From positions 124,001-188,000 of the IMG/VR virus record IMGVR_UViG_3300013005_000001: DNA of 64,000 bases, one strand, 5' to 3'. A program made the translations under genes and the position numbers. The notes beneath the pieces were generated by a model. The model saw nothing but the letters and a program-made list of their open reading frames with translations. It was not told the DNA's origin and did not search any database. Positions 212 to 2,048 of the stretch are shown one piece after another. Numbering within the stretch: position 1 is the first letter of the stretch; each line of letters opens with the position of its first letter.

Positions 212-257
212 CTACCCATAAAAGAAAAACCCAGGAACTGACCCTGGGTTATCTTTA
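212..257 (-). repeat. Cassette junction 1: hairpin + TTTTTCTTTTATGGGTAG (intrinsic-terminator-like)
   Basis: 46 nt identical to 914-959; stem AACCCAGG/CCTGGGTT followed by a U-tract on the minus strand. Confidence 0.9.
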
Positions 258-261
258 TTGT

Positions 262-408
262 CTAGTTTTCGAGTAGCTTCGCCAATACATCTAGCACTAA
301 ATCCCATTCTCCCCATTCTTGGTCTGCAACGGTCTTACGGTTAATTGCATCGGCTAACTTAGTTTTCGCTGATTCGATATCGGCTAGAACTTCTTTTGGC
401 AATGACAT
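262..408 (-). CDS. 48-aa hypothetical protein (MSLPKEVLADIESAK...)
   Basis: GAGGAG SD, ATG at 408, TAG at 262; fills the space between two junctions. Confidence 0.75.
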   Translation of the reverse strand: MSLPKEVLADIESAKTKLADAINRKTVADQEWGEWDLVLDVLAKLLEN

Positions 409-448
409 GGATTTCTCCTCTGTTAGATTAGGCTTTCATACCTAATGA

Positions 449-495
449 CTATTCATAAAAGAAAAACCCCAGGGGATTGCCCTGAGGTTCTTCTT
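449..495 (-). repeat. Cassette junction 2: hairpin + TTTTTCTTTTATGAATAG
   Basis: Conserved core with a different stem. Confidence 0.85.
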
Positions 496-542
496 GACAG
501 AGTATTTATTACACACCCCTGACTGGTGTGGGCACAAGTGGC

Positions 543-833
543 CTACCGACTCAAGTCCGAAGGGCAGTCTCCAGAATGGCTAACCACTCTGTAGAGCTGC
601 TCTCCGGTTGGTCCGAACTCCCTCTGAGGGTGGAAATTGCTCGGCTTCCGAAGAAGCTCAAGCAATCCTACCTTCTTATGGCAGAACAGACAACACTTCT
701 CTGGTGAAAAGAGTCGAATTGTCATCAAATAACTCAAGGTTATCTGATTAAATTCGCTCTTCACCAAAGAAGACCGAAGTCGGTTGTGGAGAATGATCAT
801 AAACCAGTAGACTCGAAAGTCTTCTGGTACCAT
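543..833 (-). CDS. Hypothetical protein with CxxC; contains three in-frame CGG codons
   Basis: ORF 543-905; start moved to ATG 833 on the basis of a GAAAGGGGG SD. Confidence 0.6.
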   Translation of the reverse strand: MVPEDFRVYWFMIILHNRLRSSLVKSEFNQITLSYLMTIRLFSPEKCCLFCHKKVGLLELLRKPSNFHPQREFGPTGEQLYRVVSHSGDCPSDLSR

Positions 834-913
834 GATGATACCCCCTTTCTCCATGGTTTCACCCATGGGTAAAGGCGCACACCGGGTTGGTGCACGACTT
901 GGCAACCTTGCGG

Positions 914-959
914 CTACCCATAAAAGAAAAACCCAGGAACTGACCCTGGGTTATCTTTA
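914..959 (-). repeat. Cassette junction 3 (identical to junction 1)
   Basis: Exact 46-nt match to 212-257. Confidence 0.9.
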
Positions 960-970
960 CGAGTTTTACA

Positions 971-1291
971 TCAAGCATCGTAGAAAAGCTTAATAAAGCC
1001 TTCTTCGATATCCTTTGTAGGAAGAACTTTAATTGAATAAAGATCATCTGCAAAGAGACTGATGTATCCACCTTCTTGGGCAACGGCCTGCAAATCATGC
1101 ACCCCCATAGGGACACAGACATACATGTCGTTTGGCAACGATACCAATGGATGCTTCTGGTTGTCCAGATAGCACCCGTCTAGCACTCGGCTGTGCGCCT
1201 GTGTGCATGACATGTGTACCTCCATAAGGGTGTCGCCCTCAAAGAAGAACACGTGGTACGTATTCCTAGAGTAAATGGTTACCTCTTCCAT
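971..1291 (-). CDS. Hypothetical protein, 106 aa
   Basis: AAAGGAG SD; bounded by junctions. Confidence 0.8.
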   Translation of the reverse strand: MEEVTIYSRNTYHVFFFEGDTLMEVHMSCTQAHSRVLDGCYLDNQKHPLVSLPNDMYVCVPMGVHDLQAVAQEGGYISLFADDLYSIKVLPTKDIEEGFIKLFYDA

Positions 1292-1360
1292 AATTGCTCC
1301 TTTCAGTTAGCAAGTAGGGGTTGCGTACACCGGTTGGTGCACGACTAAGTAGCTGTTGGA

Positions 1361-1407
1361 CTACCTATAAAAGAAAAACGGACGCATACGAGACGCCCGC
1401 TTTCCTT
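1361..1407 (-). repeat. Cassette junction 4: hairpin + TTTTTCTTTTATAGGTAG
   Basis: Conserved core; imperfect GC-rich stem. Confidence 0.85.
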
Positions 1408-1502
1408 ACCTGTGATCATTCGGCTTCTTTTTTCTCACTTACTAGATCTTCTGTTGCCAGGCCAAAGATATGGCCCCGAATCAAATTCAATTAGCGATCA
1501 AC

Positions 1503-1688
1503 TCAGATGTGCTTCTTGATGGTCCTTGCTCCGAAGAACGAGGCAACCACAAGAACGCCCAACCAGTTAACCAAGCCAAGAACGATTGCAACAACCGTCC
1601 AAGCCCAGCTCACTGCAGGAGTCACCAAGAGAACAACCACAAGGATTGCAAACCTGTGCTCCCGGAGGAACGCTTTGATTTTGTTCAT
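1503..1688 (-). CDS. Small membrane protein, 61 aa, about 2 TM segments
   Basis: AAAGGAGGTG SD before ATG 1688; long hydrophobic stretches. Confidence 0.8.
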   Translation of the reverse strand: MNKIKAFLREHRFAILVVVLLVTPAVSWAWTVVAIVLGLVNWLGVLVVASFFGARTIKKHI

Positions 1689-1754
1689 TTCACCTCCTTT
1701 CACAAAGATGAACGAGCGCATGCCGGAGTGGCACACGACTTAGCAACCTCTCGG

Positions 1755-1799
1755 CTACTCATAAAAGAAAAACACCACACTGGCTGTGTGGTGCCTCTT
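1755..1799 (-). repeat. Cassette junction 5: hairpin + TTTTTCTTTTATGAGTAG
   Basis: Stem CACCACAC/GTGTGGTG plus conserved core. Confidence 0.9.
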
Positions 1800-1854
1800 T
1801 ATCAGTGATTGTGATTAACAGAGCGTCACTACTGCTCCGGCTTAATACATGCAA

Positions 1855-1956
1855 CTAACCGTTATATGAACGATCGCAGCTAGGGCAACGTGTTTCTCCA
1901 TTATCTGGGAACTCGTGTCCACACCACCTGCACTTAAGCTTGAGTAAAAGGCGCAT
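1855..1956 (-). CDS. 33-aa zinc-ribbon protein (MRLLLKLKCRWCGHEFPDNGETRCPSCDRSYNG)
   Basis: AAAGGAGG SD; two CxxC motifs; missed by the ORF track. Confidence 0.75.
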   Translation of the reverse strand: MRLLLKLKCRWCGHEFPDNGETRCPSCDRSYNG

Positions 1957-1997
1957 CTAACCTCCTTTCTTTGGGCTCAGGCTTCCATACCTGATAA

Positions 1998-2048
1998 CTA
2001 CCCATAAAAGAAAAACCCCCTAACTACACTGGATGTGTAGCAGGGGGA
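1998..2048 (-). repeat. Cassette junction 6: hairpin + TTTTTCTTTTATGGGTAG
   Basis: Long stem CCCCCT..CTACAC/GTGTAG..AGGGGG plus conserved core. Confidence 0.9.

What the first reader, a model, noticed from the sequence alone, without database searches (positions are those of the whole stretch)
212..2048. Cassette-like array: one small gene per unit, joined by hairpin + conserved TTTTTCTTTTATRRRTAG
Six junctions (212, 449, 914, 1361, 1755, 1998) separate unrelated small minus-strand genes, each with a strong SD. Stems differ, but the 18-nt core extends beyond what a terminator U-tract needs. No sigma70 boxes are evident between core and gene. The core may be a phage-RNAP or hairpin promoter fused to the terminator, an RNA processing site, or a crossover site for gene shuffling (integron-like; RecA is nearby). 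The cargo resembles early host-takeover or anti-defence genes.
Basis: partly seen in the sequence, partly recalled or inferred. Interest (0 to 1): 0.8.

Follow-up and report, generated by a model that had tools for sequence, protein, structure and literature searches.

The report
Terminator–promoter joints between shuffled phage genes
The six repeats are the visible end of a 21-unit array in a 210-kb lake phage, where each small gene has its own terminator hairpin and a conserved promoter-like core, and related phages have gained, lost and moved whole genes by crossing over inside that core.

Summary
Six exact copies of the 18-nt core lie on the minus strand at the stated coordinates (0.16 expected by chance). 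The window cuts the array: the same genome (a 210-kb lake-water myovirus, probably infecting an actinobacterium) carries 21 co-oriented units in one 10.7-kb block and none elsewhere in 102 kb. Each unit is a GC hairpin, then a pyrimidine tract, then ATGGGTAG, a structured leader, a Shine-Dalgarno site and a small ORFan gene. The hairpin stems covary. In one leader family the core's GGUAG forms the first helix of the downstream RNA, with covariation, so that RNA probably begins near G13. Some cores have no hairpin, including the first unit of relatives' arrays, which sits in a divergent intergenic region. No sigma-70-type promoter is present. Relatives about 90% identical carry 4 to 21 units in different orders. 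Every breakpoint maps inside the core: tract variants travel with the upstream hairpin and purine-triplet variants with the downstream leader. This is the PeSL principle of T4-type phages, seen here in an unrelated lineage with a non-sigma-70 core that overlaps the terminator's U-tract. It is not integron-like. Promoter activity, and the polymerase or sigma factor that reads the core, are inferred and were not shown.

The parts
2016..2047 (-). Terminator-like hairpin ending the 186-aa gene (2069-2629); bulged GC stem with loop ATCCA
   Evidence: Read from the sequence. The same hairpin is joined to a different downstream cassette in L021 and L039.
1998..2015 (-). Core copy 1 (TTTTTCTTTTATGGGTAG)
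   Evidence: Exact match; profile hit E=1.2e-6.
1957..1997 (-). Leader with hairpin TCAGG-N8-CCTGA and SD AAGGAGG
   Evidence: The 449 unit has the same leader type with a compensatory change (TTAGG...CCTAA).
1855..1956 (-). Cargo gene, 33 aa, zinc-ribbon-like (two CxxC pairs)
   Evidence: ORF list; only weak sub-threshold Zn-ribbon Pfam hits. An orthologous cassette sits in a different context in L018.
1773..1793 (-). Terminator-like hairpin, 8-bp stem, loop AGCCA
   Evidence: Member of the hairpin family whose stem covaries.
1755..1772 (-). Core copy 2 (purine triplet GAG)
   Evidence: The A at core position 14 pairs with a compensating U in leader helix 1.
1689..1754 (-). Type-A leader: helix 1 (core GUAGCC, loop GAGA, GGUUGC), helix 2, then SD AAAGGAGG
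   Evidence: Alignment A2 and pair counts.
1503..1688 (-). Cargo gene, 61 aa, strongly hydrophobic (probably a membrane protein)
   Evidence: no family hit. This cassette is absent from L021 and L039.
1379..1399 (-). Terminator-like hairpin, 7-bp stem
   Evidence: It travels with the upstream cassette in L122:6406.
1361..1378 (-). Core copy 3 (purine triplet AGG)
   Evidence: The AGG variant travels with the downstream cassette in L021 and L039.
1292..1360 (-). Type-A leader (GGUAG...CUAC helix, second helix, SD GAAAGGAG)
971..1291 (-). Cargo gene, 106 aa ORFan (cassette J)
   Evidence: pN/pS 0.38 against L039. The identical protein is on 23 public contigs.
932..950 (-). Terminator-like hairpin CCCAGGG-TCAGT-TCCTGGG; part of a 46-nt perfect repeat with 212-257
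914..931 (-). Core copy 4
834..913 (-). Type-A leader. The start codon is ambiguous: in-frame ATGs at 866, 854 and 833.
   Evidence: The first ~70 nt of this leader precede different genes in L089, L110 and L018.
543..833 (-). Cargo gene, about 96-107 aa ORFan (cassette M)
   Evidence: One 151-nt metatranscriptome contig maps to 724-874.
467..487 (-). Terminator-like hairpin within a 76-nt 3' UTR module (467-542) that is shared with other cassettes
449..466 (-). Core copy 5 (purine triplet GAA)
409..448 (-). Leader with hairpin TTAGG-N8-CCTAA and SD GAGGAG
262..408 (-). Cargo gene, 48 aa ORFan (cassette N)
   Evidence: pN/pS 0.29 against L124. It has a different upstream neighbour in L124.
230..248 (-). 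Terminator-like hairpin, identical to the one at 932-950
212..229 (-). Core copy 6
173..211 (-). Leader and SD GAAAGGAAA
1..172 (-). First 57 codons of a 139-aa cargo gene (cassette O) that runs off the window. Fifteen more units follow in the same genome.
   Evidence: L120 11120-11539; pN/pS 0.17.

Best explanation
Each junction is a composite terminator-promoter joint between self-contained one-gene expression cassettes, in a hyperplastic and probably early region of a ~210-kb freshwater myovirus. Shown: the unit anatomy; the restriction of 21 co-oriented units to one 10.7-kb block; covariation in the terminator stems and in the leader helices; and cassette gain, loss and translocation among relatives, with every crossover inside the 18-nt core. 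Inferred: (1) the GC hairpin plus the pyrimidine tract (core positions 1-12) terminates the upstream transcript. (2) The same tract plus the purine triplet and TAG (with the downstream tAGRCC block) is a lineage-specific promoter that is not sigma-70-like and is read by an unidentified phage-specific polymerase, sigma factor or co-factor. (3) The downstream mRNA starts at about G13, so GGGUAG becomes the 5' strand of a 5'-terminal stem-loop that would stabilise the message ahead of the SD. (4) Because the core is the only sequence shared by all cassettes, short-homology recombination or template switching between cores excises, inserts or moves whole cassettes without disturbing their neighbours' expression. 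This is the same logic as PeSL cassettes in T4-type phages.
For: Six exact cores in the window. 21 units in the genome, and they account for the only 12-mers repeated five or more times in 102 kb. All 83 non-redundant copies at up to 3 mismatches in 16 related loci share one orientation per locus, the orientation of the gene that follows; an SD and start codon were found within 120 nt in 106 of 139 copies collected at up to 4 mismatches, median core-to-start distance 47 nt. The conserved block T8-T10/A11/T12/GGG/TAG is followed by tAGRCC, which was not part of the search pattern. Substitutions keep the tract pyrimidine and positions 13-15 purine. Terminator-like sites number 33 against 10.2+-2.7 expected; sigma-70-like sites 16 against 20.2+-4.9. 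Hairpin stems are 93% paired against 19-46% when slid, with 5 pairs changed on both sides. Leader type A is 97.4% paired against 32-49% slid, with 7 pairs changed on both sides and 0 of 500 shuffles reaching the score; helix 1 uses core positions 14-18, with a compensatory A:U in the GAG variant. Hairpin-less cores exist: L120:15527 and 18823, and the first unit in L122, L110 and L089, which lies in a divergent intergenic region with no co-directional upstream gene and no sigma-70 match. Homology at all window-versus-relative junction pairs is one-sided and ends 0-4 nt from the core. Cassette orders differ. Crossover intervals lie within core positions ~1-14. Arrays of 4-21 units occur at 87-94% identity over shared DNA. 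Arrangements recur in independent samples. PeSL precedent: PMC2839356, PMC4122927.
Against: No transcript-end data: the lake metatranscriptome contigs cover the array with a single 151-nt piece. No RNA polymerase or sigma factor was recognised in the ~140 kb of this genome and a sister contig that I examined. The core matches no promoter consensus I know of. Pairing of the 5' GGG exceeds the shuffled control only moderately (0.91 against 0.75, maximum 0.82). An RNA-processing or operator role for the same sequence is not excluded. The recombination mechanism (homologous, microhomology or template switching, or site-specific) is not resolved.
Confidence: 0.6

Rival explanations
1. RNA processing site. 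The array is transcribed as long read-through RNAs and an endoribonuclease cuts in the short single-stranded AU between the extended terminator-like hairpin and the leader hairpin. That leaves a 3'-hairpin-protected upstream mRNA and a 5'-hairpin-protected downstream mRNA, as RNase III does in the T7 early region (T7 example from memory).
For: In a read-through fold, pairing probability drops to 0.21 at A11 between two highly paired domains. GGUAG is demonstrably in the RNA. No polymerase or sigma factor was found for a special promoter.
Against: The hairpin plus a run of 9-12 pyrimidines is a canonical intrinsic terminator. The first unit of relatives' arrays has the core with no upstream co-directional gene or abutting hairpin. 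The invariance of an 11-nt sequence plus a downstream block is more than is known for RNase E- or RNase III-type sites (from memory).
Confidence: 0.15
2. Operator for a phage regulator. The core is a repeated, oriented protein-binding site (compare the stoperators of cluster A mycobacteriophages, from memory) that switches the whole block off or on. The promoter would be the same sequence or one overlapping it.
For: 21 co-oriented, nearly identical intergenic sites confined to one block. The probable host is an actinobacterium.
Against: It does not explain how genes placed behind strong terminators are transcribed. It is compatible with the promoter reading rather than an alternative to it. 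No candidate regulator was identified.
Confidence: 0.1
3. Integron-like site-specific recombination site. The hairpin plus core is an attC-like site cut and rejoined by a dedicated recombinase.
For: Crossovers fall in a very short interval, within about 8-14 nt of the core, in several independent events. One cassette sits at a different position in a relative (E).
Against: No integrase or recombinase family is on record in the genes within about 10 kb upstream or 30 kb downstream of the array. Cassettes are not promoterless. The hairpins are near-perfect GC stems directly followed by T-runs; no attC R/L boxes or extrahelical bases were seen, though I ran no dedicated attC search. Hairpin-less cores also mark cassette boundaries (L110:7576). 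The core is the only shared homology, so any homology-driven event must map there.
Confidence: 0.05
4. Plain terminators only. The extra conservation would be a by-product of recent duplication of a single terminator.
For: Two window copies belong to a perfect 46-nt repeat.
Against: The core is conserved in contigs whose flanking genes are unrelated or below 75% identical, while the hairpins have diverged into several families. Cores occur without hairpins. The conserved part extends 6 nt plus a further block beyond any U-tract. Gene order is not fixed.
Confidence: 0.03

Closest known systems
PeSL / PmSL cassettes (promoter-early or promoter-middle stem-loops) of T4-type phages (Arbiol et al. 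2010, PMC2839356; Comeau et al. 2014, PMC4122927)
   Same: A stem-loop terminator lies directly upstream of a promoter, then an SD and the start of a small ORFan. The elements cluster in hyperplastic regions. Insertions, deletions and replacements between close relatives have their breakpoints in the element. The cassettes are transcriptionally insulated.
   Different: The phage lineage is unrelated (0305phi8-36-like terminase, probable actinobacterial host). The promoter-like part is not sigma-70- or MotA-type; it is an invariant YTTTATGGGTAG whose 5' half is also the terminator's U-tract. 21 units stand back to back. Crossovers are confined to about 8-14 nt. Mini-circles were not tested.
Pre-early and early promoters of phage-encoded RNA polymerases, e.g. 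Thermus phage P23-45 (bioRxiv 10.1101/2022.12.01.518664)
   Same: A strongly conserved motif that is not sigma-70-like, repeated in front of a block of small early genes. The terminators of the same block also carry a conserved motif.
   Different: No polymerase homologue was found here. The sequences are unrelated. P23-45 is not reported to shuffle cassettes at these motifs.
Integron attC sites and gene cassettes
   Same: One gene per unit, hairpin-containing junctions, and variable cassette order.
   Different: No IntI, attI or common Pc promoter. The cassettes here are self-expressing. No attC imperfections were seen in the hairpins.
Halovirus HF2 intergenic repeats that carry promoters (PMC8707807; abstract only)
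   Same: Repeated intergenic elements that contain promoters in a viral genome.
   Different: An archaeal virus with AT-rich archaeal promoters. I did not read enough of the paper to know whether terminators or shuffling are involved.
T7 class III promoter with the phi10 5' stem-loop leader (from memory)
   Same: An AT-rich -4..-1 region followed by GGG at +1, with a stem-loop formed by the first transcribed nucleotides.
   Different: No T7-like RNA polymerase (PF00940) is on record in the parts of the genome examined, and only about 12 nt upstream are conserved.

Membership tests
PeSL (T4-type promoter-early stem-loop cassette) | Stem-loop with terminator properties directly upstream of the promoter | tested here: met
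   GC hairpin followed by a T-run at all 6 window units and most of the 21. Terminator-like sites 33 against 10.2+-2.7 expected. Stems covary. Function was not assayed.
PeSL (T4-type promoter-early stem-loop cassette) | Sigma-70-like (-35/-10) early promoter, or a MotA box plus -10 (PmSL) | tested here: not met
   No sigma-70-type match between hairpin and gene. Counts equal the shuffled expectation. The conserved element is YTTTATGGGTAG.
PeSL (T4-type promoter-early stem-loop cassette) | SD and start codon of a small, mostly ORFan gene follow | tested here: met
PeSL (T4-type promoter-early stem-loop cassette) | Indels or replacements between close relatives with breakpoints in the element | tested here: met
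PeSL (T4-type promoter-early stem-loop cassette) | Host genome is a T4-like myovirus | tested here: not met
   The terminase's best matches are Moorella phage MTATph1 and the 0305phi8-36 group (37-28% identity). RecA rather than UvsX. No T4-like match in DNA searches.
PeSL (T4-type promoter-early stem-loop cassette) | Excised mini-circles formed by recombination between neighbouring elements | not testable with these tools
It needs inverse PCR or raw or long reads.
Integron | IntI tyrosine recombinase with attI and Pc next to the array | tested here: not met
   No integrase family among the precomputed Pfam hits for the genes from ~10 kb upstream to ~30 kb downstream of the array.
Integron | attC: imperfect inverted repeats with R/L boxes and extrahelical bases; promoterless cassettes | tested here: not met
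   Hairpins are near-perfect 5-13 bp GC stems followed by T-runs, with no such features seen; I ran no dedicated attC model. Each cassette has its own promoter-like core.
Intrinsic (factor-independent) terminator | GC-rich stem, 3-8 nt loop, and a U-rich tract directly after | tested here: met
   Termination itself was not measured.
N4-type hairpin promoter | A 5-7 bp stem with a 3-nt loop is required for recognition by a giant virion RNAP (definition from memory) | tested here: not met
   Loops are 3-7 nt and stems 5-13 bp. Cores without hairpins are conserved. The 3436-aa virion protein matches an 'endolysin' PHROG, not a polymerase.
T7-like single-subunit RNAP promoter | A ~23-bp conserved -17..+6 region together with a T7-like RNAP gene in the genome | tested here: inconclusive
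   The layout (AT-rich, then GGG, then a 5' stem-loop) resembles it. No such RNAP is on record in about 140 kb, and about 70 kb of the genome was not seen.

The most novel reading that the evidence does not exclude
The core is the promoter of a dedicated, still unrecognised transcription device of this phage lineage (a divergent phage RNA polymerase, or a sigma-like or co-factor protein). Its recognition sequence has been fused to the preceding terminator's U-tract and to the 5' stem of the next mRNA. The result is a minimal 'plug' of about 30 nt that makes any gene placed behind it an insulated early gene. The exchange at an interval of 8-14 nt may be helped by a specific factor rather than by general recombination alone.
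Probability: 0.25. Interest if true: 0.7.

Novelty: new variant of a known kind. Interest (0 to 1): 0.55.

Why it matters
It shows that the PeSL principle is not peculiar to T4-type phages: a repeated regulatory joint that insulates genes and also serves as the crossover point for shuffling them. It has arisen, or been kept, in an unrelated and uncultured jumbo phage of lake bacteria, using a different promoter-like sequence. The element gives a simple sequence handle (core plus tAGRCC) for finding the accessory-gene pool of this phage group in metagenomes. It also points to an unidentified transcription specificity, and it offers a compact natural terminator-promoter-leader module. The nucleotide-level crossover map, in which tract variants stay with the terminator and purine-triplet variants stay with the leader, is a clean natural dissection of where one function ends and the next begins.

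Tried and rejected
- RNA end mapping: both run searches and the single read-laying run were used. Four lake metatranscriptomes gave only low-depth contigs, with one 151-nt piece in the array, so nothing can be said about transcript starts or ends.
- Search for a phage RNA polymerase or sigma factor: Pfam, PHROGs and NCBIfam scans; PDB sequence searches of the 792-, 1225-, 2220- and 3247-aa proteins; atlas look-ups of the 792- and 846-aa proteins; a DxDGD motif screen; and a walk over ~140 kb of the genome and a sister contig. Nothing was found.
- Rfam on the window and six related loci: no family.
- Exact 18-mer in 185,579 species genomes: 51 single hits, none with the phage architecture, so it is neither a host-genome promoter nor a prophage array.
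- Literature search for the motif string: only unrelated primer-like hits.
- Sigma-70 and extended -10 readings, and sigmaB/SigF-type GGGTAT, were rejected by eye against consensus sequences recalled from memory. The critical A at -11 is missing, the spacing to any GTTT is too short, and the base 6 nt after TAG is not conserved.
- A mini-ORF starting at the core's ATG was rejected because ATA, GTA and TTC variants exist.
- Replication iterons and Chi-like sites were rejected because the copies are spaced one per gene and confined to one block.
- Assembly chimeras were rejected because the same arrangements recur in independent samples (L021/L039, L089/L110, L120/L121) and the window's arrangement is held by 18 DNA runs from 2018 to 2024.
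Full report
**Observation.** The pattern TTTTTCTTTTATRRRTAG occurs exactly six times in the 64-kb window. All six are on the minus strand, at 212, 449, 914, 1361, 1755 and 1998. Shuffles predict 0.16 copies, and 0 of 100 reach six. Read on the minus strand, each copy directly follows a GC-rich hairpin. A leader of 39-80 nt comes next, then a strong Shine-Dalgarno site and a start codon. Looser versions of the motif are not enriched elsewhere in the window. Sigma-70-type promoter matches are at chance level, and none lies between core and gene. 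Terminator-like sites are enriched.

**What genome this is.**
- The window is a novel myovirus. It has a large terminase (16030-17904), portal (22967-24637), major head protein (28356-29411) and two tail-sheath-like ORFs (47665-49140 by PHROGs, 49961-51232 by a sub-threshold Pfam match), plus a bacterial-type RecA (5189-6175) and a Clp-type ATPase (7091-8260).
- No deposited phage resembles it at the DNA level.
- The terminase is closest (37-28% identity) to Moorella phage MTATph1 and the Bacillus 0305phi8-36 group of ~200-kb phages.
- Sequencing runs holding the window are lake-water metagenomes from 2018 to 2024.
- An exact-protein look-up returned locus L120 from a 210,302-bp contig. L120 positions 1-11291 are 100% identical to window 11291-1, so L120 continues the same genome past the window's left edge.
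- Further along the same contig is a WhiB-family gene. Others use WhiB as the marker for phages of Actinobacteria (PMC10914622), so the host is probably a freshwater actinobacterium.

**Size of the array.**
- In L120 and its continuation L123 there are 19 cores at up to 3 mismatches, all in one orientation.
- A profile HMM built from 110 junctions finds two more diverged units (L120:11603 and 19996) and nothing credible elsewhere on either strand of a 102-kb composite of this genome.
- The only 12-mers repeated five or more times in those 102 kb are pieces of the core, and all lie in one block at record 142,230-152,262.
The last unit drives a 792-aa gene.

**Anatomy of a unit.**
- I collected 83 non-redundant junctions from 16 related loci. 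The conserved part runs from the G that closes the hairpin, through T1-T5, Y6, T7-T10, A11, T12, G13-G15, T16 and A17, to G18.
- A second block, tAGRCC, lies 6-10 nt after the core. It was not part of the search pattern, so its conservation is unbiased.
- Substitutions keep the tract pyrimidine (T to C) and positions 13-15 purine (G to A). A17 is invariant in 139 of 139 copies.
- An SD and start codon were found within 120 nt in 106 of 139 junctions. The median distance from the end of the core to the start codon is 47 nt.
- The hairpins fall into a few families. In the commonest (loop AKCCA) the stem is 93% paired against 19-46% when the partners are slid, and five pairs change on both sides. 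The stems are therefore selected as structures.
- An A-rich run before the hairpin can pair with the T-tract, as in strong or bidirectional terminators.

**The 3' part of the core is RNA.**
- When RNA is folded from core position 13, its first or second nucleotide is paired in 96 of 105 junctions, across many unrelated leader folds.
- The control is only moderately lower: 0.75 (maximum 0.82) with shuffled downstream sequence, against 0.91 observed. Mean energy is -11.5 against -8.3 kcal/mol.
- The stronger evidence comes from one leader type that precedes many unrelated genes. In an alignment of 21 examples, a two-helix structure is 97.4% paired against 32-49% when slid. Seven pairs change on both sides, and 0 of 500 shuffles reach the observed score.
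- Helix 1 is made of core positions 14-18 (GGUAG) plus two more nucleotides, closed by a GNRA, UUCG or similar tetraloop.
- In the window's 1755 unit, where core position 14 is A, the pairing partner has changed from C to U.
- The many G-U pairs make the structure strand-specific. That indicates RNA, not a DNA cruciform.
- In a read-through fold, pairing probability falls to 0.21 at A11, between the extended terminator stem and the leader stem.
- The boundary between upstream RNA and downstream RNA therefore lies at about U12/G13. A purine triplet at that point fits a transcription start.

**The core is separable from the terminator.**
- Several cores have no abutting hairpin: L120:15527 and 18823, L056:446 and L028:931.
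- The same holds for the first unit of the array in L122, L110 and L089.
- That first unit sits in a 350-nt divergent intergenic region whose upstream neighbours are on the opposite strand. There is no sigma-70-type match on the array strand, and the core lies 60 nt ahead of the first array gene.
- A promoter must exist there, and the core is the only conserved candidate.
- In the window's own genome this position is occupied by an extra 186-aa gene (2069-2629) with a different upstream region.

**Shuffling.**
- For every window junction that has a counterpart in a relative, homology is one-sided and stops 0-4 nt from the core. For example, L021:462 and L039:1376 join the upstream flank of the 1998 unit to the downstream flank of the 1361 unit. 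Those genomes therefore lack the window's 1379-1997, which is two cassettes.
- I cut each locus at its cores and clustered the pieces. The cassette orders are:
  - This genome: Y L J M N O E F P Q . H B D R A C G A
  - L124: M E N . O F P Q H I B D R A C G A
  - L122: . L E F C G A
  - L039: J K A .
  - L110/L089: K S T I D (C A)
- These orders show deletions, insertions, replacements, and one cassette (E) that occupies different positions in this genome and L124.
- The shared DNA is only 87-94% identical, while arrays range from 4 to 21 units.
- At nucleotide resolution, T-tract variants travel with the upstream hairpin and the purine-triplet variants (GGC, GGA, GAA, AGG) travel with the downstream leader. 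The exchange interval always lies inside the core: positions 1-12, 5-14, 7-14, or -3 to 13.
- Leaders and 3' UTR-hairpin modules are themselves found with different coding regions.
- The arrangements recur in independent samples, which argues against assembly chimeras.
- The cargo ORFs have no family assignment, apart from a HAD/PNKP-like protein and a PcfJ-like protein further along the array. Most show pN/pS of 0.17-0.38, so they are real genes.

**Distribution.**
- The extended motif TTTTATGGGTAG-N4-TAGRCC hits only nine stretches of the IMG/VR collection, all from this phage lineage.
- The exact 18-mer occurs once each in 51 of 185,579 species genomes, never with the phage architecture.
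- It is thus a lineage-specific phage element, not a host promoter.

**Mechanism.**
- The most economical reading is a terminator-promoter joint. The hairpin and pyrimidine tract end one transcript. The tract, the purine triplet, TAG and the downstream block start the next one at about G13. The first transcribed bases then close a 5'-terminal stem that would protect the message.
- The cassette boundaries and their shuffling are shown directly. Termination and promoter activity are inferred.
- What reads the core is unknown. I found no RNA polymerase or sigma factor in about 140 kb of this genome and a sister contig.
- RNA data were too thin to map ends.
- Processing of read-through RNA at the AU between the two stems, and an operator role for the same sequence, remain possible.

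**Comparison with known systems.**
- The closest described system is the PeSL cassette of T4-type phages. It has a stem-loop terminator just upstream of an early promoter, then an SD and an ORFan. It clusters in hyperplastic regions, and breakpoints between close relatives lie in the element. Mini-circles formed by recombination between neighbouring elements have been demonstrated (PMC2839356, PMC4122927).
- Here the logic is the same, but two defining features fail: the promoter is not sigma-70- or MotA-type, and the phage is not T4-like. I file it as a new variant of that kind.
- It is not integron-like. There is no integrase, the cassettes are self-expressing, and I saw no attC features.
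- A functional parallel for a conserved, non-sigma-70 early motif exists in Thermus phage P23-45, where phage-encoded polymerases read such motifs.

Noticed in passing
window 34097-35305 (+), within the GC-richer stretch 31000-35000: This ORF has an N-terminal Mtd_N domain (major tropism determinant of diversity-generating retroelements, E=2.7e-17) and tail-fibre PHROG hits. A DGR target gene may be present. I looked for no reverse transcriptase or template repeat.
   Followed up: no
L180 15656-15943 (same contig as the window, record ~176,360): A WhiB-family regulator gene sits next to a cold-shock-domain gene. It suggests an actinobacterial host for this ~210-kb phage.
   Followed up: partly
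L120 15889-16015, 18841-18966 and 19319-19483: Some cores are followed by long (125-165 nt) conserved non-coding leaders. Two share a motif ending ...GTGGCTTARCAGCTCC-N4-5-AACGAGTAAATAGT, and it recurs in L089, L099 and L124. There is no Rfam match. They could be regulatory leaders or small RNAs.
   Followed up: partly
window 212-257 and 914-959: A perfect 46-nt direct repeat (A-rich run, hairpin and core) flanks cassettes M and N. It is the longest homology between two units in the window and an obvious substrate for deleting 702 bp.
   Followed up: partly
window 55237-61899; L182 16670-20740; L183 10653 onward: Three consecutive giant virion-module proteins (2220, 1356 and 3436 aa). The last matches a large 'endolysin' PHROG (E=3e-122). 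The first two have no hits at all.
   Followed up: partly
L181/L184 (sister contig): 3117-4769, 4780-5529, 5933-7531 in L184: Adjacent JAB-like, ThiF (E1-like) and AAA genes. This combination is seen in ubiquitin-like conjugation systems and in some defence or counter-defence systems (from memory).
   Followed up: no
L181 2765-3991 against L180 ~14730-14753: The sister contig carries a cytochrome P450 gene between genes that are adjacent in the window's genome. This is an accessory-gene indel outside the core-bearing array.
   Followed up: no
L120 16016-16462 and 19484-19927; L123 18395-18838; L179 12341-12784: ORFs of 147-148 aa recur four times in and after the array. The two in L120 fall in one cassette cluster, and the 147-aa one is identical in relatives that differ in array content. 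I did not compare the other two.
   Followed up: no
window 3003-3875, 4041-4823, 5066-5468: Lake metatranscriptome contigs (2017) match these stretches exactly, while the array is almost unrepresented. This would fit transient early expression of the array, but it could also be DNA carry-over.
   Followed up: partly
window 2630-2746 and 2069-2629: The 186-aa gene and its upstream region replace the hairpin-less first core found at the homologous position in L122, L110 and L089. The surrounding 2-3 kb is less GC-rich than the array (0.41 against 0.47). It may be a separate insertion with its own promoter.
   Followed up: partly
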